Positions 2,896 to 43,737 of a stretch of DNA of 64,000 bases are shown piece by piece. Origin of the DNA: Macrostomum lignano. Its lineage: Eukaryota. The DNA is taken from NCBI GenBank assembly GCA_002269645.1, contig NIVC01000064.1:124001-188000 (forward strand). The letters are read 5' to 3'. The stretch's first letter is position 1, and each line of letters begins with the position of its first letter. A program made the translations under genes and the position numbers. The notes beneath the pieces were generated by a model. That model ran no database searches. It had not been told where the DNA came from and saw only the letters and a list, made by a program, of their open reading frames with translations.

Positions 2896-3027
2896 TTTTA
2901 TAACTTTCACGCGGCCGATTTGTTATAACGCACGCCGAATTTTCTGATTGGCTGAGAGCTTTTGTTAAAATAGCCGCCGAATTTTCTGATTGGTCGAGCC
3001 GGGGGCAGTCAGGTCGACTCTGATTGG
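2896..3027 (-). promoter_or_regulatory. Pol II promoter module: three CCAAT boxes plus TATA box
   Basis: ATTGG at 2947-2951, 2988-2992 and 3023-3027; TTTTATA at 2896-2902 (TATAAAA on minus). Confidence 0.55.
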
Positions 3028-5171: not shown

Positions 5172-7004
5172 TTATTTGCTTGTCCTGCCCGTCGGACCAA
5201 TCATCATCGGGTACTTTGTCGCGGAATCGACTCCGCTGACGTCAACAGTGGCGCTGCTGCTGCCGTATTTGTTGTTATAACTGACGCTGATCTTTGACCC
5301 TCGACGACGAGCATCTCGAGTATCGCCGTCTCCGGGCTGACCTTCACGCCGAGTAGCCATGCAGCGCGTGACCAGAATGCAGGCCAGCGAATAGCAGAAT
5401 CCCACAGCCAGGCCGAGAGACACGTCCAGCACGAGGACAGACACAGCGGTCAGTAGCCATGTGCTCAAGTCCAGGTACTTGGCTTCACGCCACAGTTTAG
5501 GAATATCGGTCACTTGTTTGAACAACCCGACTAAGGACACGACAATAACGGAGGCCAGAGCGCAGTCGGGAACGGCTTCGAACAACGGGCCAACTGCTAG
5601 CACAACCAGTAGCAAGACGAGGCAGCTCACTGCTGATGCCACCTGCGACTTCATGCCCGCTCCGACCACCACAGCGCATCGAGCCAGCGCGCCAGTAGCG
5701 TAGAAGCACTGGAAGAAGCTGCCAAACAGACTGGACGTTCCCAGTACAAAAAGTTCTCCATTGTAATTAACTTCATAGTCAAACTGCAGGGCGTACATTT
5801 TCCCGATAGACAGGGACATGGCCGCGCCGACTAAACTAACAGGCAGGCACGGGAGCAGGACGTTTGGCAGGAAGGAGAAGTCCGGTACTAGCGGTAGCGG
5901 CAAGCCTCTCGGGACGGTTCCGACTACGTCAACGCCGAAGCGCGACTGCAATTGCAACGCGTGTGACGCCACCAGCGCCGATAAAATGATAAGCAGTTCA
6001 ACTGGCAGTGGAACTTTGATGCACTTTTTGACGCGCGGATTCAGGTACTCTTTCATTAGGTAGAGCGGCACCATGCACGCAACGGAGGTGATTACGGTTG
6101 CCCAGTTAGTCGACGCGATGTCGTTAAATATTCCGGTGTAGCTGGCAATCAGTTTAACAAAGTTGTCGCCGCCAGTTGGCTGAACGCCCAGCAGCATCGG
6201 AACCTGGCTGGTGAAGATGTGCACAGCTGCGGCTGTTGTAAAGCCGCGAAGCATCGGGTTGGAGACGTACTTCATCACAAAGCCGAGCTGCAAGGTGCCA
6301 AGCGCCATGTTGATTACTGATGCCGCAAAACTGCCTAAAACGGCGACTTGAAGTCTAGCGTATTCTTCCACGGTGAGTCCGCCGTAGTACTCATCGGAGT
6401 CGCTCGAACAGTCGGCATTTAGATTGATCTCATCAACCTCTGAGTATAAAGAGCAATTACTTATGGTGCTGTTAGAGCCCGGAAGCTGGTCCATGTACTG
6501 ACGATAGGTCGTCCCGATCATGTCCGCTAGCAGGAGCGAGGTCAGTGAGAAAGTGCCTAGCGATAAGTGACGTGACCTCCCTAGCAGAGAGTAGAGAGCC
6601 ACGGGTATCAGCGAAGTGTACAGGCCGTTGATGGGTCTTAGACCGGCCAGTAAGCCATAGGCCAGGCCTTGTGGTATGTGAAAGACGCTCATTGTTAATC
6701 CGGCGAGCAGGTCCGACACCAGAGCTTTGCTGGAGTAGCTTCCGCTAGAGATCAGGGAATAGAACGGAAACAGCAGCTGGAACAAGCTCCCGGCTCGGTG
6801 CTTCAGCGCTACCATCGTTGGCTCGCTGCAGCAGGAGTTGCAGCAATTACTGCAGCCGCCGCGAAACGGCTTCTTACCGAGCAGGCCTCGTCGTCTCGTT
6901 GTTGAAGATCCGTACAGATGGTGCAAATCGTCCGACAACAACGGAATTGTTTCCGATCGAGTGCTCTCCAACAGGTCAGCCTCTGATTCAGTTGCCGTTG
7001 TCAT
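5172..7004 (-). CDS. SLC26/SulP anion transporter paralog A, single coding exon, 610 aa, no STAS domain
   Basis: Uninterrupted ORF with SLC26 motifs HIPQGLAYGLLAGLRPINGLYTS, GRSRHLSLGTF, GVQP, VVGTVPRGLP, FQCFYATGALAR, GMKSQ, VLDVSLGL. A short polar tail follows TM14. An AG acceptor at 7041-7042 lies 36 nt upstream of the ATG. Confidence 0.92.
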   Translation of the reverse strand: MTTATESEADLLESTRSETIPLLSDDLHHLYGSSTTRRRGLLGKKPFRGGCSNCCNSCCSEPTMVALKHRAGSLFQLLFPFYSLISSGSYSSKALVSDLLAGLTMSVFHIPQGLAYGLLAGLRPINGLYTSLIPVALYSLLGRSRHLSLGTFSLTSLLLADMIGTTYRQYMDQLPGSNSTISNCSLYSEVDEINLNADCSSDSDEYYGGLTVEEYARLQVAVLGSFAASVINMALGTLQLGFVMKYVSNPMLRGFTTAAAVHIFTSQVPMLLGVQPTGGDNFVKLIASYTGIFNDIASTNWATVITSVACMVPLYLMKEYLNPRVKKCIKVPLPVELLIILSALVASHALQLQSRFGVDVVGTVPRGLPLPLVPDFSFLPNVLLPCLPVSLVGAAMSLSIGKMYALQFDYEVNYNGELFVLGTSSLFGSFFQCFYATGALARCAVVVGAGMKSQVASAVSCLVLLLVVLAVGPLFEAVPDCALASVIVVSLVGLFKQVTDIPKLWREAKYLDLSTWLLTAVSVLVLDVSLGLAVGFCYSLACILVTRCMATRREGQPGDGDTRDARRRGSKISVSYNNKYGSSSATVDVSGVDSATKYPMMIGPTGRTSK

Positions 7005-10259: not shown

Positions 10260-13200
10260 ATGGCAGACAATACCGAAGACCTGACCTACCATGTGCACAG
10301 ACCAGTCCTAGACTATGGCACTTTTGCTACAAAATATCGAGAGACATTCCGTCGAAAGCGATCCCTGCTAGAGGTTGCTCGCGATGAAGCTAAACAGCAG
10401 TGCGGAGGCTGCACCGGTCGGCACTGGGTCAGCCGTCTGCTCAACTTGGTGCCGTTAGTGAATCTGCTTCGACTTAATCAGTATAGCAGAACCGACCTGC
10501 TCTCCGACGTTGTGGCGGGGTTCACTACCTGCGTGTTTCACATACCCCAAGGCCTGGCTTACGGACTGCTAGTCAGCCTCAAACCAATCAACGGTCTGTA
10601 CACGTCTCTGTTTCCCGTATTCATATTCGGCATATTCGGCCGATCGAGGCACCTGTCTATTGGTACATTCTCTCTGATGGCTCTATTATTGTCCGACATG
10701 ATCGAAGCGAACTACGAAGCTTATATACGTCGGATGCCGGGTAACTTTAGTGCACCGATGAACTACACTAGGGCTGAATATGCCAAGTTGCAAACTGCCG
10801 TGGTTGGCACTTTTGCCGCCTCTGCTATGATTCTGACGGTCGGGATTCTGCGCCTGGGATTCTTTATGCGCTACATGTCGGATGCCATGCTGAAGGGATT
10901 CACCGCCGCGGCGGCTGTTCAGGTTGTTGTCAGCCAACTGCCTCTGCTGCTCGGGATTCAGCCCGAGAGAAGCAACAGTCACTTCAGGATTGTAGCTGTG
11001 AGTTGCTATAGAAGTCCCAATTCCAATTATATAGATGTCCTAATACTAAAAATGAGTTGTCTGTGGGTAGGTAGGTAGGTATGCGATAGATTTCAGAAAA
11101 AATGGCTCAACCGATTTTCTTCAAACTTGCACCATTCGATCAGAAATTTTCCTGGGACGGTACATGCATCTTGGCTAAGAAATTGCTCAATATTAAAGGG
11201 ATTAAATATTCGAAAAACATGCTTTTTTGCAAAGGTCAAGCAGCTCTTTCGACTTGAAATGCATTGTAATAATGCTAGAGAAAAAACTGACTGACTGAAT
11301 TTCAATTCTGATAAAGATTGCATCACAAAAAGATGAAAACAGTGTCGAAAAAATGCACACAAGGCTTGATTGTAATTGCGTAACCATATTGCTAACTTAA
11401 ATTGAGACTGATACTGGCTGACTGAGAAATTGATTATGTCATAACTTTTTACTCCAATTGACTTGCTGTAAGAATTGAATTATAAGGACCACAATTCATG
11501 TTCTCCAATTGAAAAGAGATAGCCAAGATGCGAACAGACTAGAATGCTAATGTAGCGACCTGGGTTCGAATCTTAGTAGTGTAAAAAGAAAAAGATTTTT
11601 TTTATCAAAACACCTTAAAAAACACAAAACTGCTAAACATAATAGAAGCGCAATGTCAAACATAGAAGAGCCACCATGTCAAACATAAAAGAGCCACCAT
11701 GCCAAACATAAAAGAAGCACTATGTCAAACATATATGTGACTCCACGTCAAACATTTAAGAGCCACCATGTCAAAACATTTAAGAGCCAACATGTCAAAA
11801 CATTTAAGAGCCACCATGTCAAACATTTAAGAGCCACCATGTCAAACATATATGTGACTTTATGTCAAATTTTAAAGAGCCACCATTTCGAACATTAAAT
11901 AGCCACTTTGTCAAACATTAGAGAGCCGCCGTGTCAAACATAAAAGAGCCACCATGTCAGACATTAAAAAGCCACCGTATTAAACATAAAAGAGTTACCA
12001 TGTAGAACAAAAAACAGCCACCATGTCAAACATGAAAGAGTCACCATGTAGAATATTAAAGAGCCACCATGAAGTACATTAAAGAGCCACCATGTCAAAC
12101 ATTTAAGAGCCACCATGTCAAACATATATGTGACTTTATGTCAAACTTTAAAGAGCCACCATTTCGAACATTAAATAGCCACTTTGTCAAACATTAGAGA
12201 GCCGCCGTGTCAAACATAAAAGAGCCACCAGGTTAACCATTAAAGAGCCACCATGTCAAACAATAAAGAGCCACCATGTCAAACATAAAAGAGCCACCAT
12301 TTCGAACATTAAAGAGCCACCATTTCAAACAGTAAAGAGCCACCATGTCAAACATTAAAAAGCCACTTTGTCTAACATTAAAAGAGCCACCATGTCAAAC
12401 ATTTAAGAGCCACCATTTCAAACAGTAAAGAGCCATCATGTCAAACATTAAAGAGCCACTTTGTTTAACATAAAAGAGCCACCATGTCAAACATTAAAGA
12501 GCCACCATGTCAAACATAAAAGAGGCACCATGTCAAACCTAAAAGAGCCACCATGTCAAACATAAAAAAGACACCATTTCGAACATTAAAGAGCCACCAT
12601 TTCAAACAGTAAAGAGCCACCATGTCAAACATAAAAGAGCCACCATGTCAAACATTAAAAAGCCACTTTGTCTAACATTAAAGAGCCACCATGTCAAACA
12701 TTTAAGAGCCACCATGTCAAACATAAAAGAGCCATCATGTCAAACATTAAAGAGCCACTTTGTTTAACATTAAAGAGCCACCATGTCAAACATTTAAGAG
12801 GCACCATTTCGAACATTAAAGAGCCACCATTTCGAACATAAAAGAGCCACTTTGTTTAACATTAAAAAGCCACCATGTCAAACATTAAAGAGCCACCATG
12901 TCAAACATAAAAGAGGCACCATGTCAAACCTAAAAGAGCCACCATGTCAAACATAAAAGAGCCACCATTTCGAACATTAAAGAGCCACCATTTCAAACAG
13001 TAAAGAGCCACCATGTCAAACATAAAAGAGCCACCATGTCAAACATTAAAAAGCCACTTTGTTTAACATTAAAGAGCCACCATGTCAAACATAAAAGAGC
13101 CACCATTTCGAACATTAAAGAGCCACCATTTCGAACATAAAAGAGCCACCATGTCAAACATTTAAGAGCCACCATGTCAAACATAAAAGAGCCATCATGT

Positions 13201-16200
13201 CAAACTTTAAAGAGCCACTTTGTTTAACATTAAAGAGCCACCATGTCAAACATTAAAGAGCCACCATTTCGAACATTAAAGAGCCACCATTTCGAACATA
13301 AAAGAGCCACCATGTCAAGTATAAAAGAGCCACCATGTCAAACAATAAAAAGCCACTTTTTCTAACATTAAAGAGCCACCATGTCAAACATGGCACTTTG
13401 TCTAACATTAAAGAGCCACCATTTCAAACATTTAAGAGCCACCATGTCAAACCTAAAAGAGCCACCATGTCAAACATAAAAGAGCCACCATTTCGAACAT
13501 TAAAGAGCCACCATTTCGAACAGTAAAGAGCCACCATGTCAAACATTTAAGAGCCACCATGTCAAACATATATGTGACTTTATGTCAAACTTTAAAGAGC
13601 CACCATTTCGAACATTAAATAGCCACTTTGTCAAACATTAGAGAGCCGCCGTGTCAAACATAAAAGAGCCACCAGGTTAACCATTAAAGAGCCACCATGT
13701 CAAACAATAAAGAGCCACCATGTCAAACATAAAAGAGCCACCATTTCGAACATTAAAGAGCCACCATTTCAAACAGTAAAGAGCCACCATGTCAAACAAA
13801 AAAGAGCCACCATGTCAAACATTAAAAAGCCACTTTGTCTAACATTAAAAGAGCCACCATGTCAAACATTTAAGAGCCACCATTTCAAACAGTAAAGAGC
13901 CATCATGTCAAACATTAAAGAGCCACTTTGTTTAACATAAAAGAGCCACCATGTCAAACATTAAAGAGCCACCATGTCAAACATAAAAGAGGCACCATGT
14001 CAAACCTAAAAGAGCCACCATGTCAAACATAAAAAAGACACCATTTCGAACATTAAAGAGCCACCATTTCAAACAGTAAAGAGCCACCATGTCAAACATA
14101 AAAGAGCCACCATGTCAAACATTAAAAAGCCACTTTGTCTAACATTAAAGAGCCACCATGTCAAACATTTAAGAGCCACCATGTCAAACATAAAAGAGCC
14201 ATCATGTCAAACATTAAAGAGCCACTTTGTTTAACATTAAAGAGCCACCATGTCAAACATTTAAGAGGCACCATTTCGAACATTAAAGAGCCACCATTTC
14301 GAACATAAAAGAGCCACTTTGTTTAACATTAAAAAGCCACCATGTCAAACATTAAAGAGCCACCATGTCAAACATAAAAGAGGCACCATGTCAAACCTAA
14401 AAGAGCCACCATGTCAAACATAAAAGAGCCACCATTTCGAACATTAAAGAGCCACCATTTCAAACAGTAAAGAGCCACCATGTCAAACATAAAAGAGCCA
14501 CCATGTCAAACATTAAAAAGCCACTTTGTTTAACATTAAAGAGCCACCATGTCAAACATAAAAGAGCCACCATTTCGAACATTAAAGAGCCACCATTTCG
14601 AACATAAAAGAGCCACCATGTCAAACATTTAAGAGCCACCATGTCAAACATAAAAGAGCCATCATGTCAAACATTAAAGAGCCACTTTGTTTAACATTAA
14701 AGAGCCACCATGTCAAACATTAAAGAGCCACCATTTCGAACATTAAAGAGCCACCATTTCGAACATAAAAGAGCCACCATGTCAAGTATAAAAGAGCCAC
14801 CATGTCAAACAATAAAAAGCCACTTTTTCTAACATTAAAGAGCCACCATGTCAAACATGGCACTTTGTCTAACATTAAAGAGCCACCATTTCAAACATTT
14901 AAGAGCCACCATGTCAAACCTAAAAGAGCCACCATGTCAAACATAAAAGAGCCACCATTTCGAACATTAAAGAGCCACCATTTCGAACAGTAAAGAGCCA
15001 CCATGTCAAACATTTAAGAGCCACCATGTCAAACATATATGTGACTTTATGTCAAACTTTAAAGAGCCACCATTTCGAACATTAAATAGCCACTTTGTCA
15101 AACATTAGAGAGCCGCCGTGTCAAACATAAAAGAGCCACCAGGTTAACCATTAAAGAGCCACCATGTCAAACAATAAAGAGCCACCATGTCAAACATAAA
15201 AGAGCCACCATTTCGAACATTAAAGAGCCACCATTTCAAACAGTAAAGAGCCACCATGTCAAACAAAAAAGAGCCACCATGTCAAACATTAAAAAGCCAC
15301 TTTGTCTAACATTAAAAGAGCCACCATGTCAAACATTTAAGAGCCACCATTTCAAACAGTAAAGAGCCATCATGTCAAACATTAAAGAGCCACTTTGTTT
15401 AACATAAAAGAGCCACCATGTCAAACATTAAAGAGCCACCATGTCAAACATAAAAGAGGCACCATGTCAAACCTAAAAGAGCCACCATGTCAAACATAAA
15501 AAAGACACCATTTCGAACATTAAAGAGCCACCATTTCAAACAGTAAAGAGCCACCATGTCAAACATAAAAGAGCCACCATGTCAAACATTAAAAAGCCAC
15601 TTTGTCTAACATTAAAGAGCCACCATGTCAAACATTTAAGAGCCACCATGTCAAACATAAAAGAGCCATCATGTCAAACATTAAAGAGCCACTTTGTTTA
15701 ACATTAAAGAGCCACCATGTCAAACATTTAAGAGGCACCATTTCGAACATTAAAGAGCCACCATTTCGAACATAAAAGAGCCACTTTGTTTAACATTAAA
15801 AAGCCACCATGTCAAACATTAAAGAGCCACCATGTCAAACATAAAAGAGGCACCATGTCAAACCTAAAAGAGCCACCATGTCAAACATAAAAGAGCCACC
15901 ATTTCGAACATTAAAGAGCCACCATTTCAAACAGTAAAGAGCCACCATGTCAAACATAAAAGAGCCACCATGTCAAACATTAAAAAGCCACTTTGTTTAA
16001 CATTAAAGAGCCACCATGTCAAACATAAAAGAGCCACCATTTCGAACATTAAAGAGCCACCATTTCGAACATAAAAGAGCCACCATGTCAAACATTTAAG
16101 AGCCACCATGTCAAACATAAAAGAGCCATCATGTCAAACATTAAAGAGCCACTTTGTTTAACATTAAAGAGCCACCATGTCAAACATTAAAGAGCCACCA

Positions 16201-19200
16201 TTTCGAACATTAAAGAGCCACCATTTCGAACATAAAAGAGCCACCATGTCAAGTATAAAAGAGCCACCATGTCAAACAATAAAAAGCCACTTTTTCTAAC
16301 ATTAAAGAGCCACCATGTCAAACATGGCACTTTGTCTAACATTAAAGAGCCACCATTTCAAACATTTAAGAGCCACCATGTCAAACCTAAAAGAGCCACC
16401 ATGTCAAACATAAAAGAGCCACCATTTCGAACATTAAAGAGCCACCATTTCGAACAGTAAAGAGCCACCATGTCAAACAATAAAAAGCCACTTTGTCTAA
16501 CATTAAAGAGCCACCATGTCAAACATAGAAGAGCCACCATGTCAGACATTGAAAAGCCACCGTATCAAACATAAAAAGAGCCACCATGTCAACATAAAAG
16601 AGCCACCATGTCAACATAAACGAGCCACCATGTCAAACATTAAAGAGCCACCATGTCAAACATAAAAGATACACAATTTCAAACGTAAAAGCAAGCGAAT
16701 TTTAAAGGAGCCACTATAATGCTAAGGAAATTGTCGCACTAGCTACTTATTGTCTGGTGGATGCTTGCTATTTGGGGATGCTATCTATCTGGGGGATGCT
16801 TGCTCTCTGGAAGATGCTTGCTATCTGGGGGATGCTTGCTATCTGGGGGAAGCTTGCTATCTTGGGGATGCTTGCTATCTGGGGGATCTTTGCTATCTGG
16901 GGGGTGCTTGCTATCTGGGGGGTGCTTGCTACCTTGGGGATGCTTGCTATCTGGGGATGCTTGCTATTTGGGGGATGCTATCTATCTGGGGGATGCTTAC
17001 TATCTGGGAGATGCTTGCTATCTGGGGGATGCTTGCTATCTGGGAGATGCTTGCTATCTGGGGGATGCTTGCTATCTGGGGGATGCTTGCGGTCTGGGAG
17101 ATGCTTGCTATCTGGGGGATGCTTGCTATCTGGGAGATGCTTGCTATCTGGGGGATGCTTGCTATCTGGGAGATGCTTGCTATCTGGGGGATGCTTGCTA
17201 TCTGGGAGATGCTTGCTATCTGGGGGATGCTTGCTATCTGGGGGATGCTTGCAATCTGGGGGATGCTTGCTATCTGGGGGATGCTTGCTATCTGGGGGAT
17301 GCTTGCTGTCTTGGGATGATTTCTTTTTGCATTGCACTTCATTTAAGTATTTTGTCTGTTTTCTTTGTGAATGCTTTATTTGGCTATATTTTTGTTACTT
17401 GTAGAGCAGAGATTCTATACAGATGTCCCCCAACGGGGGGCGAAGATTGCTAGTAGATGTCCTATTTCTGATGCTATAGATGTCCGATTTCGATGCTATA
17501 GATGTCCGATTCCTGATGCTATAGATGTCCGGTTCGTGGTGCTATAGATGTCCGATTCTTGATGCTATAGATGTCCGGTTCGTGATGCTATAGATGTCCG
17601 ATTCCTGATGCTATGGATGTCCGGTTTCTGATGCTATAGATGTCCGATTCCTGATGCTATAGATGTCCCGTTCGTGATGATATAGATGTTTGATTTGACT
17701 CTATGGATGTCGGAGTTCTGATGCTATAGATGTCCAATTGGTAACAATTAGCATAATGCGCTCATTTCCAATCCACCCACAGAGCTTAATCAATCAGTTC
17801 AAAGTGATCAAGTCCACCAACTTCGTCACTCTGGGCATATCGATCGGCTCCATTATCATTCTCTACCTCGTGAAAGAGTTCGTTAATCCGCGAGTTAAAA
17901 AGAAGATTAGAGTGCCTCTACCAATTGAACTCATAATGATTGTTATCAGTCTGCTAGTCTCAAATTTTGCCAAATTTAACGAACAACTCCAAGTGGCCAT
18001 TGTTGGCGAGGTGCCACGCGGTCTGCCATCTCCGCTGGTGCCGGATTTTGGCTTCCTGCCAGCGATGCTCCCAGCGGCCATCCCGGTTGGGCTGGTTGGC
18101 GGCGTGGTCACAATGTCGCTGGCCAAGATGTACTGCCTGGAGTTTCAGTACAGCTACGATTTCAATGAGGATTTCGCCATACTGGGAGTCAGCAGTCTGG
18201 TGTCCAGCTTCTTCCAGTGCTTCTTCGCCTGCGGAGCTCTGGCTAGGAACTCTGTGGTGGTGTCGGTGAGCCTGCGGCGGCCCAGCAACTGGGGATCTGG
18301 GAGGCTGACCCAGCAGCAGGGGATCTGGGAGGCTGGTCCAGCAGCTGGGGAGCTGGGAGGCTAGCCCAGCAACCGGAGATCTGGGAGGCTGGCCCAGCAG
18401 CTGGGGATCTGGCAGGCTGGCCCAGCAGCTGGGGATCTGGGAGGCTGGCCCAGCAGCTGGGGATCTGGCAGGCTGGCCCAGCAGCTGGGGATCTGGGAGG
18501 ATGGCTCAGCAGCTGGGGATCTGGGAGGCTGGCCCAGCAACTGATGATCTGGGAGGCTGGTAGCCCAGCAACTGAGGATATGAGAGGCTGGTGGCGGCGT
18601 AACTTTAGTAAATAATGTATACCTGGCAGTAGGCACAGCGTTTTGCAAACCTATTCATATTTTAATAAAATCGCTTGAAAATGAACAAAATGGTTGTGTT
18701 TTTGTCAAACCACCCGCCCAGGTAGGCATGAAGAGCCAGATCGCCAGCCTCATCAGCTGCTCAGGCATGCTGTTAGTGCTGCTAGTAATTGGGCCATTCT
18801 TCGAGACCATCCCTACCTGCGTGCTGGGCTCCATCATAGTCGTGTCGCTTATCAACGTCATGTCGCCGCTGAAAGAATTGCCGCGTATTTTTCGAGTTTC
18901 CCGCGTTGATTTCGCCGTTTTCGTTGTCTCCGGCCTGGCAGTCCTTGTCCTGGACGTGACACTTGGTTTAGTGATCGGTTTTGCTGTCACTTTGTTCTCT
19001 GTTGTGCTCAGGACTCAGCTGCCTTCGACGGCTGTGCTGGGTCGAGTCGAGGACACGGACTTGTACGAGGATTTGCAGGTCTGCCCATCGGCAAAGGCGT
19101 TGCCAGGGCTGGCCATCCTGCGATTCAATGCGCCGCTGAATTTCGCCAACGCCGAGGCGTTCGGCGACTTTGTGATTCGACTGGGACGCGATGGCCAGAC

Positions 19201-20382
19201 GATGGGCCAACCAGCTGAAGGTGCAGCGCCGCCTGAGGAGCCGGTGCACACCGTCGTACTGGACTGCTCGCCGTGGGGCTACGTCGACATGGTGGGGGTG
19301 CGCACTCTACGGGAGGTGAGCCAGTGACATCCCTGTCAGTTACATCCCAGTCAGTGACATCCCTGTCAGTGACATCCCTGTCAGTGACATCCCTGTCAGT
19401 GACATCCCTGTCAGTGACATCCCTGTCAGTGACATCCCTGTCAGTGACATCCCTGTCAGTGACATCCCTGTCAGTGACATCCCTGTCAGTGACATCCCTG
19501 TCAGTGACATCCCTATCAGTTACATCCCTGTCAGTGACATCCTAGTCAGTGAAATGAGATTCCCATGGATTTCCAAAGTGATTCCCATGGATTTCCAAAG
19601 TGATTCCCATGGATTTCCAAAGTGATTCCCATGGATTTCCAAAGAGATTCCAATGGATTTCCCAAGAGATTCCAAGGGATTGCCAAAGAGATTCCAATAG
19701 ATTTCCAAAGAGATTCCCATGGATTTCCAAAGAGATTCCCATGGATTTCTAAAGAGATTCCCATGGATTTCCAAAGAGATTCCCATGGATTTCTAAAGAG
19801 ATTCCAATGGATTTCCAAAGAGATTCCAATGGATTTCCAAAGAGATTCCCATGGATTTCTAAAGAGATTCCCATGGATTTCCAAAGAGATTCCCATGGAT
19901 TTCCAAAGAGATTCCCATGGATTTCCAAAGAGATTCCCATGGATTTCTAAAGCGATTCCAATGGATTTCTAAAGAGATTCCCATGGATTTCTAAAGAGAT
20001 CTCATGAGCTTTTAAATCGCCTATCAAGAACATCTTCACGATGGCTATGAACTTCCCCAAGCAGTGAGCAATGAAAGCTTCTAAAAGAGCAACTTTTCCA
20101 CTGCATCAGGTACATCGTCAGCTGACAGATCGTGGCCAGCGACTCCTGCTGGCAGGCTGCCAAGATCCGGTCAGAGCCAGCTTTGCTAAACAGGGTCTCA
20201 CACTGGAGGTGAATCCGGGACCATCTTCAGCCTGTTTTGTCAGCCTTTACGACGCGGCACTGTTTGCCATGGCAACTGCATCGCAGCCACAGGGTGCACC
20301 GTTATTCAGCAATTTTGTTGTAGTTGAGGATGACGTGGAAGGCTTAATCGTGAACGATGCTGGAGTATCTGAAGACTCTTGA
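10260..20382 (+). CDS. SLC26 anion transporter paralog B with STAS, ~695 aa; exons 10260-10997, 17783-18265, 18722-19315, 20110-20382
   Basis: GT-AG junctions, all phase 0, join contiguous SLC26 motifs and STAS motifs (LRFNAPLNFANA, VLDCSPWGYVDMVG). AATAAA near 20462. Confidence 0.9.
11655..16670. repeat. 23-bp satellite (GAGCCACCATGTCAAACATTAAA) with a 1444/1467-bp higher-order repeat
   Basis: Marker CATATATGTGAC recurs at 12123, 13567 and 15034; identical spurious ORFs recur at 1467-bp spacing. Confidence 0.97.
16750..17312. repeat. 18-bp minisatellite GGGGGATGCTTGCTATCT
   Basis: About 30 tandem copies. Confidence 0.95.
17454..17735. repeat. ~23-bp minisatellite GATGCTATAGATGTCCGATTCCT
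   Basis: About 12 copies; degenerate copies also at 11005-11040. Confidence 0.9.
18280..18590. repeat. 28-29-bp intronic minisatellite CCCAGCAGCTGGGGATCTGGGAGGCTGG
   Basis: Starts ~14 nt after the donor of paralog B intron 2; same family as 38270-38728. Confidence 0.92.
19322..19550. repeat. 15-bp minisatellite CAGTGACATCCCTGT
   Basis: About 15 copies starting 6 nt after the intron 3 donor. Confidence 0.95.
19555..20000. repeat. 22-bp minisatellite GAGATTCCCATGGATTTCCAAA
   Basis: About 20 copies in paralog B intron 3. Confidence 0.95.
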
Positions 20383-24911: not shown

Positions 24912-25160
24912 GGGGGTTGTAGCCTAGTGGTCGGAGAGTCGGACTCACGATCTGAAGGTTAGGGGTTCGATTCCCGATCCCACCCGGAGCAATTTGTGTC
25001 CTTGAGCAAGACACTTAAGTCTGCATTGCTTCAGTTCACGCAGCTGTAAAATGGGTGCCAGCATTAGCTGGGGTAATTGAGGGTGTGTGCGGCGACCCCC
25101 CCCCCAGTATTCGGACAGCCGCATCTCAACTCAAGTAGGGATCGCTAAGAATCTGGACAG
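24912..25160 (+). mobile_element. tRNA-derived SINE with CORE(MIR)-like central domain
   Basis: A box TAGCCTAGTGG and B box GGTTCGATTCC, then GTCCTTGAGCAAGACACTTAA...CAGCTGTAAAATGGG resembling the CORE-SINE domain. A second orphan B box lies near 24853-24863. Confidence 0.75.
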
Positions 25161-28142
25161 TCACACTAGCGATTCCTGCTGATTCGCCAGCCGGAGCTCC
25201 AGCGGCTGGGGCAGCCGGGTTCGCGGCTTCGGCTGCAGCAGCTGCTGTTGCTGCTGCCTCGGACTGCTCAAAGCTGAGTTGGTTTCGCTTCGAGAAGCAG
25301 CAGCGCCTGCAGCCGTTGCCGCGGGTCCTCGCATTGGCGCGTGCCGGCTGGAGAAGTTCAACTGCCGCTGCTGCTGTCGACTTTGCCGGCCGCCAACCGT
25401 CGCCGAATCGAAGCTGTCCCGGGTGTGCAACCGGGACAACCGGTCGAATTCCTGACGCCGGTGTCGGGCGGTTTCGTCTCCGTCTGGCTGGTGCCGATGG
25501 TGCTGATGTTGGTGCTGCTGGTGCTGCTGGTGCTGGTGCTGCTGGTGCTGGTGATTCGATGACTGGTGCTTTGATGAAGATTCGAGGCCCAGCAGCTCCA
25601 AACGAGTCTCTGAACTGGAACGCTTGCGGAATTTGGACTGACGCTGGAGCTGCTGGAGCTGCTGCTGCTGCTGCTGATGCTGCGCAGCAGCCGACGTAGC
25701 CGCCGCTGCCGTCGAAGCCAACGAATTCGCTGGCACCGCTCGCACCGGTCTCGCTGCCGGCGAAGACGATGCCGTTGTTGTTGATGCAGAAGATGCCGAT
25801 GCGGACGCTGGAACTGACGAAGACGCGACTGTCGACACCAGCGGATGACGTGACTTGGACTCGGCTAGCGGATCGAATCCCGCCGGCAGCGGCTGCCGGC
25901 CCGACGTCCCCACCGACGCTGGCCGCCTGTTCATTCTGGCTGGCACCGGCGGCCGCTCCCGAGCAGGCGGCTTCGTCACCTCCTGGTAGGGCAGCTGCGG
26001 AGGCGGAATTGGCTTTCTTTGAGGCTTCTGCGGCGGCTGCTGCTGCGGCGCCCTGGACCGCTGACTTCGAACCTGCCTTTTGATAGCGATATCGTACGGC
26101 GGCGGCTGCTGACGCTCAGGAATGTCAATGGGAGCTGCGGCTGCCGATCGACGATTGTCGTCAAGCTGCTGATCGCTGAGCTGCAGCCCGGAGTCCTTGG
26201 ACAGGGAGGACAGCGACAGCGGCTCGGCGGCGTCCATCGCGGTTGGCCTGACTCCGTCGAGACTCTCCGTGGAGGACAGGTGCTCGTCAGTCTGGCAGAT
26301 GTGAGTCACGAAATCGTTGAGAGCTCGTTCGTTCTGCCGGGGGTCCGGCCAGATTTCGTCGAAATTGGTGATCAACAGCTCGATGAGTTTGTTGATGCGC
26401 TGCGCGTCCTGCTCCATGCTGGCCAGGTTGATGTCCTGCTGGTCCTGCTCCAGCACGGAGAACGAGACCGACCGGCCGATGTTCGCCGGGTTCATCTGGT
26501 TCTGCTCGTGATTGCTGGCCACTCGACGCAGTGCAGTCATCAGCATGTGCAACAGGTGGGCATTCTGCGGATGCATCTGCTGGATGACGCTGCGGATTTC
26601 ATCGGAAGCGGCCTTCGAGCTGAGCACGCCGTCCACTACGTCGCGTCCGATGCAGCTCCACTGGCCGAAGAGGTTCCTCTGCAGCAGGCAGCCGGGCAGG
26701 TTCCTGAGGTAGTGCTTCAACGCGTCGCCAATGCAGTGGTCGCCGAAGCTGTTGAGCTGCGGCAGATTGTCCGGCTTGGACAGATCGTACTGGCTCAGCA
26801 GCTGCAGCACCTGGTTCTTCTCGCTCACCGAGCCCGGCTGCCGGAAAATTCCTTTGGTGGCGTAGCAGCGGTGGTAGATCTGCGCCAGAAGACACGTGAC
26901 CGGACGCGACACCACGCCAGAGGGGAACAGCTCGGCCAGGGGCCGGCCGATTATTGGCGACGGCTCGCCGGACGAAGAGCCTCCACCGCTGATTCCGCCG
27001 CTGCTGCCGCCGCCCGACACTGTCAAAGCTTCCACTGAGGCCTGCCTGACCAGCAGCGACCGTCGGTTGCTGGAAATCCAGTTGCGAATTTTGCTGGGCA
27101 CTTCAGACGCTCGACGGGACTGCTGCTGCTGGTGCTGGTGCTTCTTCTTCTTGCTGGTCGAGCACACCCCGGCAGAGCAGGCGTCCTGCGAATGCAGCGA
27201 CAATCGAACCCGACAAGCTGTCGGCTGCTCAACGTCCAGATCCATCGAGTTCGACTCGTTCGGGCTGGTCGACGACGCCTCGGACATGACGCTGCCGCGC
27301 CGCCTCTCCGACTTGTGCTGCTCGTGGATGTGGTACAGCACGGTGGCGAAGATGGACTCGCAGCCCACCATGCAGTGATTGCCGCTGGAGCCTTCCAGGC
27401 ACAGCTGCGCTCTGAAGCTCGCATCGAGTTTAAACGCTGTTTTGCACTTTCGCGCCACATCGTTAGCCGTCTCGTACGGCTTGACCGTCAGCGTCTGGAC
27501 GGCGGCACCGGATGATGAGGCGGCGTCCGCTCCACCGTACGATGGCGACGGCGGATCGACGTAGACCTGGATGCAGCTGGCCAGGCTGACCTGGCACTGC
27601 TCGCTCGGCTCGGCGTCCTCGCCGTAGAGTCGACGCAGCGTCTCCAGGTTGACCTTCTGGAAGGCCAGCAGGAAGCGCTCCTTCTCGCTGCTGGTGCCGA
27701 AAGTGACAATCATGAGGTCAGTGTGCCAGCCTGCCAGCACCGCCAGGCTCTCGTCCTTGATCCGGTGGCTATCGCTGGGCACGTAGTCTGAGACGTTCCG
27801 TCTGACCCAAACGTAGTAGACAAATATCTTGGCCTTGATCTTGTCCTTCTTCTTTAGCTTGAGCTGGTCGCCTTGGAGCTGCAGCACCCTGTTGGACGGA
27901 TCCTGATCGAAGTGCACCGGCTGACCTTTGGAGGACTTTTTGCGCGAATGAACGTCAACCCGAGCCTCGAACAGGGTCTCGCCGGCGAGGTGTTCGTCCT
28001 CGGACGAGCTGACGCATTCGCCGCTGGAGTCGCGCAGCAATCTGGAGGCGCCGCTGCCGCCGAACGACTTGGAGAATGCAGGCGTCTGCAGGTACTGCAG
28101 CTGCTGCTGATTCCGCCTGACTGTGACACCTGTGTCGTCCAT
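25161..28142 (-). CDS. ARHGAP20: ARHGAP20-like Rho GTPase-activating protein (PH-like, RA-like, RhoGAP, Q/A/P-rich tail), ~993 aa single large coding exon
   Basis: RhoGAP motifs TKGIFRQPGS (arginine finger), DALKHYLRNLPGCLL and NQMNPANIG; an RA-like TLTVKPYETANDV lies upstream. Likely ATG at 28142, possibly extended by a micro-exon ending at 28647. C-terminus is ESLV. Confidence 0.82.
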   Translation of the reverse strand: MDDTGVTVRRNQQQLQYLQTPAFSKSFGGSGASRLLRDSSGECVSSSEDEHLAGETLFEARVDVHSRKKSSKGQPVHFDQDPSNRVLQLQGDQLKLKKKDKIKAKIFVYYVWVRRNVSDYVPSDSHRIKDESLAVLAGWHTDLMIVTFGTSSEKERFLLAFQKVNLETLRRLYGEDAEPSEQCQVSLASCIQVYVDPPSPSYGGADAASSSGAAVQTLTVKPYETANDVARKCKTAFKLDASFRAQLCLEGSSGNHCMVGCESIFATVLYHIHEQHKSERRRGSVMSEASSTSPNESNSMDLDVEQPTACRVRLSLHSQDACSAGVCSTSKKKKHQHQQQQSRRASEVPSKIRNWISSNRRSLLVRQASVEALTVSGGGSSGGISGGGSSSGEPSPIIGRPLAELFPSGVVSRPVTCLLAQIYHRCYATKGIFRQPGSVSEKNQVLQLLSQYDLSKPDNLPQLNSFGDHCIGDALKHYLRNLPGCLLQRNLFGQWSCIGRDVVDGVLSSKAASDEIRSVIQQMHPQNAHLLHMLMTALRRVASNHEQNQMNPANIGRSVSFSVLEQDQQDINLASMEQDAQRINKLIELLITNFDEIWPDPRQNERALNDFVTHICQTDEHLSSTESLDGVRPTAMDAAEPLSLSSLSKDSGLQLSDQQLDDNRRSAAAAPIDIPERQQPPPYDIAIKRQVRSQRSRAPQQQPPQKPQRKPIPPPQLPYQEVTKPPARERPPVPARMNRRPASVGTSGRQPLPAGFDPLAESKSRHPLVSTVASSSVPASASASSASTTTASSSPAARPVRAVPANSLASTAAAATSAAAQHQQQQQQLQQLQRQSKFRKRSSSETRLELLGLESSSKHQSSNHQHQQHQHQQHQQHQHQHHRHQPDGDETARHRRQEFDRLSRLHTRDSFDSATVGGRQSRQQQRQLNFSSRHAPMRGPAATAAGAAASRSETNSALSSPRQQQQQLLQPKPRTRLPQPLELRLANQQESLV

Positions 28143-36407: not shown

Positions 36408-39400
36408 TTACAAATTCGTATCCATGGTAACGAGATTCGTGGCCGGCATCCCTTCTTCGCCTTCAATTTCGATAGCCTCGTTCACGTGCTCGCTTGAGGA
36501 CGAAATCTCGTCCTGAGAGATCGGGGGTACGTTGCTGGCGTAAAGTACAGCATCGTGCAGGCTGATGAAGAACAAGGACCTGTCAGCGTGCTTGTAAAAG
36601 TCGTGGAGATGAAGGTGGAGCCTCACAGACTCTTTGCAGCGGGCGAACAGGACGCGATAGCCTTGCTTTTTTAGTCGCTGATAAGTCTGCGCGAGTGATG
36701 ATAGCAAAGCGTATGTTTTCTTAAATGATCGCAATGCCTACTTTAAGTAGCTTGCGCGTGGGTGTTAAAGAACAATTCCACATATTTAAAAGTAAAGAAA
36801 TTAGATTTGGGAAAGGAACCTGACAATCTGGGAAGGAGTCTGAGGATTCGGGAAGGGAATCTAAGGATCCTGAAAGGAATCTGAGGATTCGGGAAGGCAT
36901 TATAAGGATCTAGGGAAAAAGCTAAGGATCTAGGGAGGAATCTGGGGATCTAGGGAGGAATTTTAAGAATCTAGGAAGGAATCTGAGGATCTGAGGATCT
37001 AGGAAGGAATCTGAAGATCTAGGAAGGAATCTGGGGATTTACGGAGGAATCTGGGGATCTAGGAAGGAATCTGAAGATCTAGGAAGGAATCTGAAGATCT
37101 AGGAAGGAATCTGAGGATCTAGGAAGGAATCTGGGGATTTAGGAAGGAATCTGAGGATCTAGGAAGGCATCTGAGGATCTAGGAAGGAATCTGAAGATCT
37201 AGGAAGGAATCTGAGGATCTAGGAAGGAATCTGAGGATTTAGGAAGGAATCTGGGGATTTAGGGAGGAATCTGAGGATCTAGGAAGGCATCTGAGGATCT
37301 AGGAAGGCATCTGAGGATCTAGGAAGGAATCTGAGGATCTAGGAAGGAATCTAAGGATCTAGGAAGGAATCTGGGGATTTAGGGAGGAATCTGAGGATCT
37401 AGGAAGGCATCTGAGGATCTAGGAAGGAATCTGGGGATCTAGGAAGGAATCTGAGGATCTAGGAAGGAATCTGAGGATCTAGGAAGGAATCTGAGGATCT
37501 AGGGAGGAATCTGGGGATGTAGGGAGGAATCTGAGGTTTAAACCAAACGAAAAAACTAGGATATCAAAATAGCTGCCATGAATTTCACCTCTTTAACGGT
37601 CCTAACGCCGACCATATCAACCGACACCCAAGAGGAGCAGTCCAGCACAAAAGTGTGCACCGCTGTTGCCTCATCTGATTCTGGATGCTCAGCTTCAACT
37701 CTGCCGACTGGTTCCGCCTCGGTGGGTCGCCGAGCCTCATGGGCCAGCTGCAGCACGAAGTCCTGGAATCGTTCCGCGTTGGCAAAGTTCAACGGCGCGT
37801 CGAAGCGGACAATTTTCAGTCCCGGCAGCTCCTCGGCCGCCGCGTACACCCGGACGTTTCTGTAGATATCCGTGTCGCCAATGCGGCCAAGGACCGCTAT
37901 CCTGGGCGACTGGGTGCGCAGGACCACGGAGAACAGGGTGAAGCCCAGACCGATAGCCAAGCCGAGGGTCACATCCAGGATGAGCACGGAGAGCGCTGCC
38001 ACCAGCCACACGCTGAAGTCGATCCGGGAGATGCGCCAGATCTGCGGCAGTTCCGTCACCTGCTTGATCACGTTGATTAACGATACGACTATGATGGAGC
38101 CCAGCACGCAGGTAGGGATCGAGCGGAAGTAGGGTCCGATGGCCAGCAGCACCAGCAGCATGCCTGAGCAGCTGATGAGGCTGGAAATCTGGCTCTTCAT
38201 GCCCACCTGAAAGTTTGCGCGATAAAATTGTCAGGTAATGTCAGCACTGAATGCTAAAATGCAACCGCTTCCCAGATCCTCAGTTGCTGGGCCACCTTCT
38301 CAGATCTCCAGTTGCTGGGCCAGCCTCCCAGATCCCCGGTTGCTGGGCCAGCCTCCCAGATCCCCGGTTGCTGGGCCAGTCTCCCAGATCCTCAGTTGCT
38401 GGGCCAGCCTCCCAGATCCTCAGTTGCTGGGCTACCAGCCTCCCAGATCCCCAGTTGCTGGGCCAGCCTCCCAGATCCTCAGTTGCTGGGCCAGCCTCCC
38501 AGATCCCCAGTTGCTGGGCCACCAGCCTCCCAGATCCCCGGTTGCTGGGCCAGCCTCCCAGATCCTCAGTTGCTGGGCCAGCCTCCCAGATCCCCAGTTG
38601 CTGGGCCACCAGCCTCCCAGATCCCCGGTTGCTGGGCCAGCCTCCCAGATCCCCAGTTGCTGGGCCACCAGCCTCCCAGATCCCCAGTTGCTGGGCCACC
38701 AGCCTCCCAGATCCCCAGTTGCTGGGCCGCCGCAGGCTCACCGACACCACCACAGAGTTCCTGGCCAGAGCTCCGCAGGCGAAGAAGCACTGGAAGAAGC
38801 TGGACACCAGACTGCTGACTCCCAGTATGGCGAAATCCTCATTGAAATCGTAGCTGTACTGAAACTCCAGGCAGTACATCTTGGCCAGCGACATTGTGAC
38901 CACGCCACCGACAATGCCAACGGGAATAGCGGAGGGGAACACGGTCGGAAGAAATCCCAAATCAGGAATGATAGGCACCGGCAAGCCCCTGGGCACTTCG
39001 CCCACTATGACAACGCCGAGGTTGGAGCTCATGTTGGAGAACTCTGACGCCAGCAGGGTAATTATGATAATGAGCAGTTCTATTGGCAGCGGCACTTTGA
39101 ACTTTTTTTTCACCAGGGGGTTGATGAATTCTTTGACGAGGTAGAGCACCGCGCAGCAGGCGGCGGATAGGCCCATGGTGACAAAATTTGCCGTCTCGAT
39201 CACTTGGAACAAATTGATGAGGCTCTGCAGGTGAGGAGAGGCTGGGCTAGTTGGTGTATTTATCCTAGCGTCACTGCCTCTACAGTATCCTACCCCAGCG
39301 TCGTTATCCTACCCCATTGTCGTTATCCTACCCCATTGTCGTTATCCTACCTTCAGTGTCTTTATCCTACCCTCAATGTATTCATCCTATCCCTCACTGT

Positions 39401-42400: not shown

Positions 42401-43737
42401 TGGGTCATGGTACAAGATTCAGTTAATTGCGTCAAATTCTAAAAAACCGTATGTTTTCATAACTGCAGTTAGAAACAATCCACTGAAATTTTTTTTGGAA
42501 TCTAAAAAATGAAACTGCTAAATTTAAGTCAAAAACGGGTTGTTAAAGTCAAGGAAAGCTCACGGGGATAACTAAGGCCAAGAGCCTAGCTATAGCGCCA
42601 CAAGTGAGATTTTAGCGCAGCAGGTGAGATTTTAGCGCCACAAGTGAGATTTTAGCGCCACAAGCAATATTTAAGTGCAACAAGTGAGATTATATCGCCA
42701 CAGGTCAGATTTTAGCGCCACAAGTGAGATTATAGCGCCGCAGGTGAAATTTTTGCGCCACAGGTGAAGTTTTAGCGCCACAGGTGAGATTTTAGCGCCA
42801 CAAGGGAGATTTTAGCGCCACAGGTAAGGTTTTAGCGCCACAAGTGAGATTTTAGCGCCACAAGTGAGATTTTAGCGCCACAAGAGATTTTAGCGCCACA
42901 GGTGAAATCTTCGCGCCACAAGTGAGTTTTTAGTACAGCAGGTAAGATTTTAGCACCACAAGTGAGATTTTAGCGCCACAGGTAAGATTTTAGCGCCACA
43001 CGTGAGATTTTAGCGCCACACGTGAGATTTTAGCGCCACACGTGAGATTTTAGTGCCAAAGATGAGATTTTAAAAACAAAAAACCTAAAGGAGCATGGAA
43101 ATGGAAAAATATTTTACGCCAAATTCACTCAAATATTTACCAGGAAAAATCACTGAAAAGAACGGACATCCCTCTACGAATGAGTGATTACTGACAAAAT
43201 AAATTTCCAAGGTAGATCGAGATAAGAATTTACGGAAACTTGCTCAGGCTTAAGCTTATAGTTTTAATTAGAAATTAAACTAAGCTCGTAACACACGAAG
43301 GTCAACAAGCGACAGGTGCTGGCCAACCTCACAATGACACATTAGCGCACACCTAGGGTAGCAAATGCAAGCATGGAAAGAGAAGCAAAATGCCTTACCT
43401 GAGGTATATGAAACACGCAGGTGGTAAAGCCGGCCACTAAATCGGACACAATGTCCATTTTGCTGTATTGTCCAGTTCTAATCTGGCCAACCAGAGGCAG
43501 CAGGTTTAGCGCTCGCAGACGCCAGGCGTCCCTGCTACAGCTGCAGGCTTTGGCCATAGACGATCGAACGGTGCTGCTGAACGGCGCGTGGCCCAGCAGG
43601 GCTTCTCCGTAGGCGTTGTTGAAGTCGGCATAATTGTACACTGGCCGGCGAACATGGAATTCCAGCGCTGGCTGCGACGGCGGCGGCACTGTCTTATTGG
43701 CGTCGACATTGTCGGTTTCGGCAGGTTGAGCTGACAT
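36408..43737 (-). CDS. SLC26 anion transporter paralog C with STAS, ~722 aa; exons 43737-43399, 40471-40022, 39224-38742, 38206-37589, 36686-36408
   Basis: GT-AG phase-0 junctions; three introns sit at the same positions as in paralog B. STAS motifs VRFDAPLNFANA and VLDCSSWVSVDMVG. The last acceptor could alternatively be at 36719. Confidence 0.9.
36820..37540. repeat. 20-bp minisatellite AGGAAGGAATCTGAGGATCT (paralog C intron 4)
   Basis: About 35 copies. Confidence 0.95.
38270..38728. repeat. 28-32-bp minisatellite (paralog C intron 3), same family as 18280-18590
   Basis: CCAGCCTCCCAGATCCCCAGTTGCTGGG units. Confidence 0.93.
39290..39905. repeat. 20-bp minisatellite CCCTCAGTGTCTTTATCCTA (left arm of an inverted pair)
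   Basis: About 30 copies in paralog C intron 2. Confidence 0.95.
40757..41600. repeat. 20-bp minisatellite TAGGATAAAGACACTGAGGG (right arm, reverse complement of 39290-39905)
   Basis: About 41 copies in paralog C intron 1. Confidence 0.95.
42590..43075. repeat. 20-bp minisatellite GAGATTTTAGCGCCACAAGT
   Basis: About 24 copies in paralog C intron 1. Confidence 0.93.

What the first reader, a model, noticed from the sequence alone, without database searches (positions are those of the whole stretch)
18101..18307. 207-bp gene-conversion tract between inverted SLC26 paralogs covering the anion-binding helices
Seen: 18101-18307 matches the reverse complement of 38700-38906 at 206/207 nt, including synonymous sites, the splice donor and the first intronic repeat unit, whereas the rest of the same exon is clearly diverged even at protein level. 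The tract encodes the TM8-TM10 region and ends in a minisatellite shared by both introns. Inference: minisatellite-seeded conversion homogenises the substrate site. The inverted pair could also invert the 20-kb RhoGAP segment.
Basis: partly seen in the sequence, partly recalled or inferred. Interest (0 to 1): 0.7.

Follow-up and report, generated by a model that had tools for sequence, protein, structure and literature searches.

The report
Gene-conversion patch between two flatworm SLC26 genes
Two old, oppositely oriented anion-transporter (SLC26) gene copies in the flatworm Macrostomum lignano share a 207-base patch of near-identical DNA, because one copy has repeatedly overwritten the other there; this is a clean but ordinary case of gene conversion between duplicated genes.

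Summary
Window 18101-18307 (+) matches the reverse complement of 38700-38906 at 206/207. The patch is the last 165 nt of an exon plus the first 42 nt of the following intron. The window is Macrostomum lignano (assembly Mlig_3_7, contig NIVC01000064.1). It carries a cluster of SLC26 paralogs: A (+), B (-) and C (-), with a RhoGAP gene between A and B. A and B are saturated at synonymous sites (dS about 2) everywhere except this patch (dS 0.028). The same patch, with the same left border, is present in the two other subgenome copies of the locus on separate contigs. Its few variants are partly shared between A-type and B-type genes. This is interparalog gene conversion at about, or after, the recent genome duplication; a wholesale assembly artefact is very unlikely. 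B carries a second patch of similar age, shared with a fourth paralog D, with no minisatellite nearby. "Minisatellite-seeded" conversion is therefore plausible here but neither shown nor required. The patch covers the end of TM8, TM9 and the start of TM10, including the conserved arginine, but not TM1 or TM3. All three locus copies are colinear, so there is no sign of inversion. It is a new member of a known kind, of modest interest.

The parts
18101..18265 (+). Exonic part of the tract in gene A: the last 55 codons of A exon 2 (GVVTMSLAK...ALARNSVVVS)
   Evidence: It differs from B at 1/165 nt. dS is 0.028 and dN is 0.
18266..18307 (+). Intronic part of the tract in A: GT donor, 13 further unique nt, and the first 28-nt minisatellite unit
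   Evidence: It is 42/42 identical to B.
18279..18591 (+). 28-nt minisatellite in A intron 2 (about 11 units)
   Evidence: It is about 87% identical to the B array in any register.
38700..38906 (-). The tract in gene B: exon 3 positions 38906-38742 plus intron positions 38741-38700
38270..38728 (-). 28/31-nt minisatellite in the homologous B intron (about 16 units)
18722..18861 (+). Start of the next A exon, with intermediate A-B identity. This is an older or patchy homogenised segment. The B counterpart is 38206-38067.
   Evidence: There are 19 fixed A-versus-B differences in 140 nt. dS is 0.49 for the slightly shorter segment of codons 408-452.
37925..38072 (-). Second young conversion tract in B exon 4, shared with paralog D (L002 12860-13007). 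A roughly 90%-identical extension runs to about 37755.
   Evidence: B-D differ at 1/148 nt and B'-D are 148/148 identical. dS is 0.025.
10260..20382 (+). SLC26 paralog A, 695 aa. Exons: 10260-10997, 17783-18265, 18722-19315, 20110-20382.
   Evidence: GT-AG splice sites and an intact ORF. It matches UniProt models P0004, P0005 and P0125.
36408..43737 (-). SLC26 paralog B, 722 aa. Exons: 43737-43399, 40471-40022, 39224-38742, 38206-37589, 36686-36408.
   Evidence: It is 99% identical to P0001. P0124 is the NCBI protein model called on this window's contig and sits in the same 90%-identity cluster.
25161..28142 (-). Single-exon RhoGAP gene lying between the two paralogs
5175..7004 (-). SLC26 paralog C: a single exon with no STAS domain. 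It does not take part in the tract.
   Evidence: It is 61-62% identical to A/B in the tract region.

Best explanation
This is non-allelic (interparalog) gene conversion within a cluster of SLC26 anion-transporter genes in Macrostomum lignano.

Genes A and B are old duplicates with synonymous sites saturated. They lie tail-to-tail, and the two tracts are about 20 kb apart. A short island has been copied non-reciprocally between them. The island consists of the last 165 nt of one exon, the splice donor, and a homologous 28-nt minisatellite at the 5' end of the following intron. This erased all divergence there while both flanks stayed diverged.

The last exchange dates to about, or after, the split of the three subgenome copies created by the recent genome duplication. 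The island probably exchanged more than once.

Inferred mechanism, not shown: a break or stalled fork in or near the unstable array is repaired from the paralog, for example by synthesis-dependent strand annealing. The 0.3-0.6 kb of array homology would serve as the pairing anchor. Heteroduplex or new synthesis would run about 180 nt into the adjacent exon and stop where homology falls to about 65%. That stop keeps the left border sharp and identical in all copies.

One consequence is that TM9 and the start of TM10, including the conserved anion-site arginine, are identical in A and B. Nothing indicates that this was selected for.

The tract is one piece of a wider mosaic. B also carries an equally young tract shared with paralog D. 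Older, decayed patches link A with B and A/B with D.
For: Shown:
- 206/207 identity spanning exon, donor and intron.
- A-B dS is 0.028 in the tract against 1.9-2.3 or saturated elsewhere. At four-fold degenerate sites, 1/25 differ in the tract against 119/196 elsewhere.
- Both flanks are diverged. On the left, 113/318 nt differ in the same exon. On the right, the 3' part of the intron is unalignable and the next exon has 19 fixed differences in 140 nt. This makes it a patch, not a crossover.
- Permutation of mismatch positions gives a maximum run of 39 nt against 143 observed.
- The tract is present in A', A'' and B' on two other contigs of the assembly, with the same left border. Only 5 sites vary in 207 nt across the five copies. 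Two of those are shared between A-type and B-type genes. At 18118, A, A'' and B carry G while A' and B' carry C, and A' and B' are on the same contig.
- dS between homeologous A copies is 0.03-0.05, which is at or above the A-B tract dS. All A copies are intact with dN/dS 0.12-0.29.
- Mlig_3_7 is known to hold about three paralogous subgenome copies that differ by about 1-2% (PMC10733133).
- Of all the intron arrays in A and B, only this one is shared. Paralog D has the same intron position but no such array.
- Intron and array lengths differ among copies: 456, 550, 452, 535 and 682 nt.
- There is a second tract, B-D, with dS 0.025.
Against: - No reads were available, so every copy rests on a single assembly.
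- That assembly was Pilon-polished with multi-mapping Illumina and RNA-seq reads (PMC5730564). This could blur the SNP-level pattern inside a 207-nt sequence present in at least five copies.
- The case for exchange after the subgenome split rests on only two sites. One of them (18288) lies in a repeat unit, where parallel change is easy.
- The direction of transfer is unresolved. GC3 and unit-variant hints weakly favour B as donor.
- The role of the minisatellite is correlative, and the B-D tract shows that conversion in this family does not need one.
Confidence: 0.88

Rival explanations
1. Assembly or polishing artefact: reads from one paralog were used to correct the other, creating a false identical segment.
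For: Mlig_3_7 was polished with Pilon using Illumina and RNA-seq reads. About 93% of read pairs map to multiple loci in this genome (PMC10733133).
Against: - The flanks are only about 65% identical, so short reads from B could not map onto a diverged A sequence and overwrite 207 nt.
- The identity continues 42 nt into the intron, where RNA-seq polishing cannot act.
- The tract appears in five gene copies on three contigs, each with private SNPs.
- Protein models from the older ML2-derived UniProt set show the same peptide in both A-type and B-type genes.
Confidence: 0.04
2. There was a single ancient event and no ongoing process. This could be one conversion, a double crossover, or template-switch patch repair before the genome duplication. 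All later differences would be private mutations or homoplasy.
For: The left border is identical in all five copies. Three of the five variable sites are singletons. One of the two shared sites lies inside a repeat unit.
Against: - Site 18118 groups A' with B' (same contig) against A, A'' and B.
- The A-B tract dS (0.028) is not larger than the dS between homeologs (0.03-0.05).
- The family shows tracts of several ages: dS 0.03, 0.3-0.5 and 0.9. This points to repeated events.
- A shared border is also expected under recurrent conversion, because conversion is confined to the island of homology.
Confidence: 0.15
3. There was no transfer. The segment is identical because of very strong nucleotide-level constraint, such as an embedded RNA element or splicing signals.
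For: Third-position identity in this region is somewhat raised in all paralog pairs (A/B-D 0.65, A/B-C 0.53-0.55, against 0.31-0.51 elsewhere in the exon). GC3 is high there.
Against: - Paralogs D and C, under the same protein constraint, differ from the tract at 18% and 38% of sites.
- No Rfam family matches there.
- Identity includes a fast-evolving intronic repeat unit.
- Polymorphism shared between paralogs cannot be produced by constraint alone.
Confidence: 0.02

Closest known systems
RHD/RHCE locus in humans (from my own knowledge: Wagner and Flegel 2000). Two membrane-protein paralogs lie tail-to-tail about 30 kb apart with an unrelated gene (TMEM50A/SMP1) between them, and exchange exon-sized segments by conversion in cis.
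   Same: Inverted tail-to-tail paralogs, an unrelated gene in between, short exon-level non-reciprocal patches, and no inversion required.
   Different: RHD and RHCE are about 92-96% identical throughout. Here the paralogs are saturated at synonymous sites, and homology survives only in a roughly 0.5-kb island.
Human fetal globin genes HBG1/HBG2 (from my own knowledge: Slightom, Blechl and Smithies 1980). The conversion tract ends at a simple-sequence repeat in IVS2, which was proposed as a recombination hot spot.
   Same: The converted exon-plus-intron segment has one border at an intronic tandem repeat.
   Different: The globin genes are direct repeats and are young. The repeat there is a dinucleotide run, not a 28-nt minisatellite.
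Polar conversion at human minisatellites such as MS32 and MS31A (from my own knowledge: Jeffreys et al. 1994).
   Same: An unstable array, with exchange concentrated at one end and reaching into flanking DNA.
   Different: Those events are allelic and were measured directly in sperm. Here the partners are paralogs, and polarity is only suggested by a single assembly.
Arm-to-arm conversion in inverted repeats or palindromes such as the human Y-chromosome ampliconic palindromes (from my own knowledge: Rozen et al. 2003).
   Same: Intrachromosomal conversion between inverted copies keeps them identical.
   Different: Palindrome arms are identical over tens to hundreds of kb. Here only about 0.2 kb of unique sequence plus an array is homogenised.

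Membership tests
Interparalog (ectopic) gene-conversion tract | Local collapse of divergence that includes synonymous and non-coding sites, against a diverged background | tested here: met
   dS is 0.028 in the tract against about 2 or saturated elsewhere. The 42 intron nt are identical.
Interparalog (ectopic) gene-conversion tract | Diverged paralogous sequence on both sides, making it a patch rather than a crossover or chimeric gene | tested here: met
   Left flank: 113/318 nt differ. Right flank: the 3' half of the intron is unalignable, and the next exon has 19 fixed differences in 140 nt.
Interparalog (ectopic) gene-conversion tract | Run of identity longer than expected from permuted mismatch positions (a GENECONV-type test) | tested here: met
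   143 nt observed against a maximum of 39 in 10,000 permutations.
Interparalog (ectopic) gene-conversion tract | Paralogs not reciprocally monophyletic within the tract (variants shared across paralogs) | tested here: met
   Two of the 5 variable sites are shared between A-type and B-type copies. This is a small number of sites, and the Pilon polishing caveat applies.
Interparalog (ectopic) gene-conversion tract | Both copies confirmed by reads spanning unique flanks | not testable with these tools
   No read data were available. The indirect support is five copies on three contigs.
Interparalog (ectopic) gene-conversion tract | Donor and acceptor identified | tested here: inconclusive
   Tract GC3 is 0.78-0.80, closer to B (0.70) than to A (0.62). 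The first A repeat unit is of the B type, but B' carries the A-type variant.
SLC26/SulP anion transporter | Sulfate_transp transmembrane domain plus a C-terminal STAS domain | tested here: met
   P0001 (a subgenome homolog 99% identical to window gene B) and P0004 (an A-type model) carry PF00916 and PF01740. A aligns end to end with prestin, SLC26A2, pendrin and SLC26A9. Paralog C lacks STAS.
SLC26/SulP anion transporter | Conserved arginine at the N-terminus of TM10 in the anion site (prestin R399) | tested here: met
   Residue 49 of the tract (ALARNS) aligns with residue 399 of prestin chain 7v73. The role of R399 is described in PMC9584906.
Minisatellite-initiated (hot-spot, polar) conversion | Tract abuts an unstable tandem array that both partners share | tested here: met
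   Intron lengths are 456, 550, 452, 535 and 682 nt in the five copies.
Minisatellite-initiated (hot-spot, polar) conversion | Conversion depends on the array, that is, it is absent where no array is shared | tested here: not met
   The B-D tract (dS 0.025) lies wholly within an exon with no shared array.
Minisatellite-initiated (hot-spot, polar) conversion | Breaks or initiation events mapped to the array | not testable with these tools
   This needs germline or somatic break mapping, or sequencing of repair products.
NAHR inversion between inverted repeats | Alternative orientations of the intervening segment, or swapped 3' halves of the two genes | tested here: not met
   A and RhoGAP are colinear in all three subgenome copies, and B is in the two copies that reach it. 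A-type 5' exons are always joined to A-type 3' exons.

The most novel reading that the evidence does not exclude
The island is not a one-off. It would be a long-lived hot spot of concerted evolution, anchored by an intronic minisatellite, that has kept the TM9-TM10 segment (half of the anion site) exchanging among cluster members since an ancient duplication. The flanks would escape one after another, giving the observed graded dS of 0.03, then 0.5, then 0.9, then above 2. On this reading, a tandem repeat decides which part of a transporter may diverge functionally after duplication.
Probability: 0.2. Interest if true: 0.5.

Novelty: new member of a known kind. Interest (0 to 1): 0.27.

Why it matters
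It is a compact, well-bounded example of an island of concerted evolution inside otherwise ancient paralogs. It lies in a neopolyploid animal whose three subgenome copies act as internal replicates for dating the exchange.

In practice it warns that trees, dN/dS scans or subfunctionalisation arguments for the M. lignano SLC26 genes will mislead unless they are computed segment by segment. The same applies to other clustered families in this repeat-rich genome. Short reads in this exon also cannot be assigned to a single gene.

It does not reveal a new mechanism.

Tried and rejected
- An Rfam scan of the whole window found only a tRNA-Val at 24912-24985 and nothing in the tract. An embedded RNA element is therefore unsupported.
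- I looked for the 28-nt unit elsewhere in the window and in the D locus and found none. It is not a dispersed element inserted independently in both introns.
- I looked for a D copy in window 1-5200. Only D's 3' flank (about 75% identical) and intron-type repeats are present, with no D exons. Whether D sits in the same cluster in this subgenome remains open.
- I tried to infer donor and acceptor from GC3, repeat-unit variants and the D outgroup. The result was inconclusive.
- I tried to obtain a third B copy, but contig NIVC01002775.1 ends about 3 kb past RhoGAP''.
- I considered a chimeric-gene or crossover origin and rejected it because both flanks are diverged.
- I considered RNA-seq polishing as the cause and rejected it because the identity runs into the intron.

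Full report
**1. The observation**

Window 18101-18307 (+) and the reverse complement of 38700-38906 are identical at 206 of 207 positions. The one mismatch is at 18244 (T versus C, a synonymous GCT/GCC change). In the same register, the 400 nt upstream are 62-67% identical and the sequence after 18307 is 21-33% identical.

**2. Source and gene content**

- An exact look-up of the window's RhoGAP protein places the window on contig NIVC01000064.1 of assembly GCA_002269645.1, known as Mlig_3_7.
- Guided by M. lignano protein models, I built gene models with canonical GT-AG introns:
  - SLC26 paralog A (+): exons 10260-10997, 17783-18265, 18722-19315, 20110-20382; 695 aa.
  - SLC26 paralog B (-): exons 43737-43399, 40471-40022, 39224-38742, 38206-37589, 36686-36408; 722 aa.
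  - Paralog C (-): 7004-5175, a single exon with no STAS domain.
  - A single-exon RhoGAP gene (-): 28142-25161, lying between A and B.
- A and B are tail-to-tail, and the two tracts are 20.4 kb apart.
- The tract is the last 165 nt of A exon 2 (equivalent to B exon 3), followed by the GT donor, 13 further unique intron nt and the first 28-nt unit of a minisatellite.

**3. The tract is an outlier against the gene background**

- Over 681 aligned codons, A and B are 65% identical in nucleotides and 45% identical at third positions.
- Nei-Gojobori dS is 1.9-2.3 or saturated in every segment except the tract, where dS is 0.028 and dN is 0.
- Four-fold degenerate sites differ at 1/25 in the tract and at 119/196 elsewhere.
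- The longest perfect run in the coding alignment is 143 nt. In 10,000 permutations of the mismatch positions the maximum was 39.
- The rest of the same exon differs at 113/318 nt.
- To the right, the two introns share only the minisatellite; their 3' unique parts do not align.
- The first 140 nt of the next exon carry 19 differences that are fixed between all A copies and all B copies. dS is 0.49 for codons 408-452, which cover most of that stretch.
- The young tract is therefore a patch with diverged sequence on both sides. That is the signature of non-reciprocal transfer rather than a crossover or a chimeric gene.

**4. The minisatellite**

- Every intron of A and B holds tandem arrays. The units differ between the genes except in this one intron.
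- The 28-nt unit GGCCCAGCA(A/G)CTGGGGATCTGGGAGGCT occurs 25 times in the window, all within 18279-18591 and 38266-38728, with 0 expected by chance.
- Paralog D has an intron at the same position and phase, but with unrelated content.
- The homologous island is therefore the 179 nt of unique sequence plus 0.3-0.5 kb of array.
- The five available copies of this intron are 456, 550, 452, 535 and 682 nt long. One of them (A') has an insert built from units of two other arrays of the same gene. The array is unstable.

**5. Internal replicates**

- Mlig_3_7 is known to contain about three paralogous subgenome copies of most loci. These differ by about 2% overall and about 1% in coding sequence (PMC10733133).
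- I recovered the other two copies of this locus:
  - NIVC01000209.1 carries B', RhoGAP' and A' (loci L001 and L004).
  - NIVC01002775.1 carries D, C'', A'' and RhoGAP'' (loci L002 and L005).
- All A copies are intact. Between them dS is 0.03-0.05 and dN/dS is 0.12-0.29.
- In the five-way comparison A, A', A'', B, B':
  - The tract has the same left border in all copies.
  - Only five sites vary in 207 nt.
  - The 318 nt to the left carry 112-113 differences between any A copy and any B copy.
- Two of the five variable sites are shared across gene types:
  - 18118 is G in A, A'' and B, but C in A' and B', which lie on the same contig.
  - 18288 is G in A'' and B', but A in the others.
- The A-B divergence in the tract (0-4 differences in 207 nt) is no greater than the divergence between homeologs of the same gene.
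- This rules out a wholesale assembly error. It also dates the last exchange to about, or after, the subgenome split, with at least one exchange probably after it.
- Caveats:
  - Only two sites carry this last inference, and one of them lies in a repeat unit.
  - The assembly was Pilon-polished with Illumina and RNA-seq reads (PMC5730564).
  - Polishing cannot explain the tract itself. The flanks are too diverged for cross-mapping, and the identity extends into the intron.

**6. A wider mosaic**

- Segment-wise dS shows a second young tract. B and D have dS 0.025 over A-codons 453-502.
- At the nucleotide level B'-D are identical at 148/148 positions and B-D at 147/148. The coordinates are window 38072-37925 and L002 12860-13007.
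- A segment at dS 0.30 follows this tract.
- D lies about 31 kb upstream of A'' on the same contig, so D belongs to the same cluster there.
- The A/B tract is also less diverged from D (dS 0.88) than most of its surroundings (1.1-2.0). Codons 247-352 are closest between A and D.
- Conversion in this family is therefore recurrent and of several ages.
- The B-D tract lies wholly within an exon with no shared array.

**7. Position in the protein**

- The 55 residues align with prestin residues 351-405 (PDB 7v73).
- Residue 49 of the tract (ALARNS) corresponds to R399. This is the conserved arginine at the N-terminus of TM10 that, together with TM3, forms the anion site (PMC9584906).
- Residues 354-375 span the intracellular ends of TM8 and TM9, and residues 378-387 lie in TM9 (PMC10699807).
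- The tract therefore covers the end of TM8, TM9 and the start of TM10. TM1 and TM3 are encoded in unconverted exons.

**8. Mechanism**

Shown:
- Non-reciprocal homogenisation of a short island between inverted paralogs.
- Recurrence of such events within the family.
- An unstable shared array at one border.

Inferred:
- A lesion in or near the array is repaired from the paralog.
- The array supplies the pairing homology.
- Synthesis or heteroduplex runs into the exon until homology fails.

I give the array-anchor sub-claim roughly 0.35-0.4. It explains why this intron, alone among the introns of A and B, shares an array, and why the tract abuts it. However, the array could equally be a passenger that was copied along with the exon, and the B-D tract shows that an array is not needed.

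**9. Inversion**

- A and RhoGAP keep the same relative order and orientation in all three subgenome copies. B does in the two copies that reach it.
- A-type 5' exons are always joined to A-type 3' exons.
- A crossover within 207 nt remains possible in principle but is not observed.

**10. Comparison and verdict**

From my own knowledge, the closest analogues are these:
- The human RHD/RHCE pair: tail-to-tail paralogs with a gene between them that exchange exons by conversion in cis.
- The HBG1/HBG2 tract, which ends at an intronic simple repeat.
- Polar conversion at human minisatellites.
- Arm-to-arm conversion in palindromes.

The present case differs mainly in how old the paralogs are and how small the surviving island is. 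It is a new member of a well-known kind. It is useful as a caution for analysing this gene family, and as a tidy natural example. It is not surprising to a specialist.

Noticed in passing
window 37925-38072 (-), extension to about 37755; L002 12860-13007: Second conversion tract, between B exon 4 and paralog D, which lies on contig NIVC01002775.1. B'-D are 148/148 identical and B-D differ at 1/148. dS is 0.025, followed by a segment at about 90% identity. No minisatellite is involved.
   Followed up: yes
window 39286-39914 and 40757-41590: B exon 2 (40471-40022) is flanked by inverted arrays of the same 20-nt unit. They are about 90% complementary over about 660 nt and could pair in the pre-mRNA, which might favour exon skipping or back-splicing.
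   Followed up: no
window 10998-17782; L005 13335-13905: A intron 1 is 6.8 kb in the window, mostly a 23-nt array of about 220 copies at 11635-16691. The same intron is only 571 nt in the third subgenome copy A''.
   Followed up: partly
window 5175-7004 (-): Paralog C is a single-exon SLC26 gene of 610 aa that ends just after the transmembrane domain and has no STAS domain. It is retained in another subgenome at 95.5% nucleotide identity. It could be a retrocopy-like, STAS-less transporter.
   Followed up: partly
L004 19859-20408 (A' intron 2): The 28-nt array is interrupted by an insert of about 190 nt made of units of the 23-nt array (A intron 1) and the 15-nt array (A intron 3) of the same gene. 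This suggests template switching between arrays, or a local assembly error.
   Followed up: no
window 24912-24985 (+): A tRNA-Val (anticodon CAC) lies about 180 nt beyond the RhoGAP stop codon (Rfam 31.8 bits; also found by ARAGORN).
   Followed up: partly
window 10260-20382: Gene A is intact and under constraint in all three subgenomes, yet no gene is called there in the NCBI annotation of the two contigs where the called genes were listed. It appears only in UniProt A0A1I8 models.
   Followed up: partly
window 43398-40472 versus 10550-10570: B has an intron within the conserved HIPQ|GLAYG motif where A has none. This is an intron gain or loss between the paralogs.
   Followed up: no
window 38207-38741: UniProt model P0003 translates B's minisatellite intron as coding sequence. 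The B reading frame stays open through most of the array (ORF 39308-38283), which invites mis-annotation.
   Followed up: no
window 4197-4692 and 495-1879: These stretches resemble the 3' flank of D (75% identity) and D's intron-2 repeats. No D exons are detectable in window 1-5200. D may be lost or displaced in this subgenome copy.
   Followed up: partly
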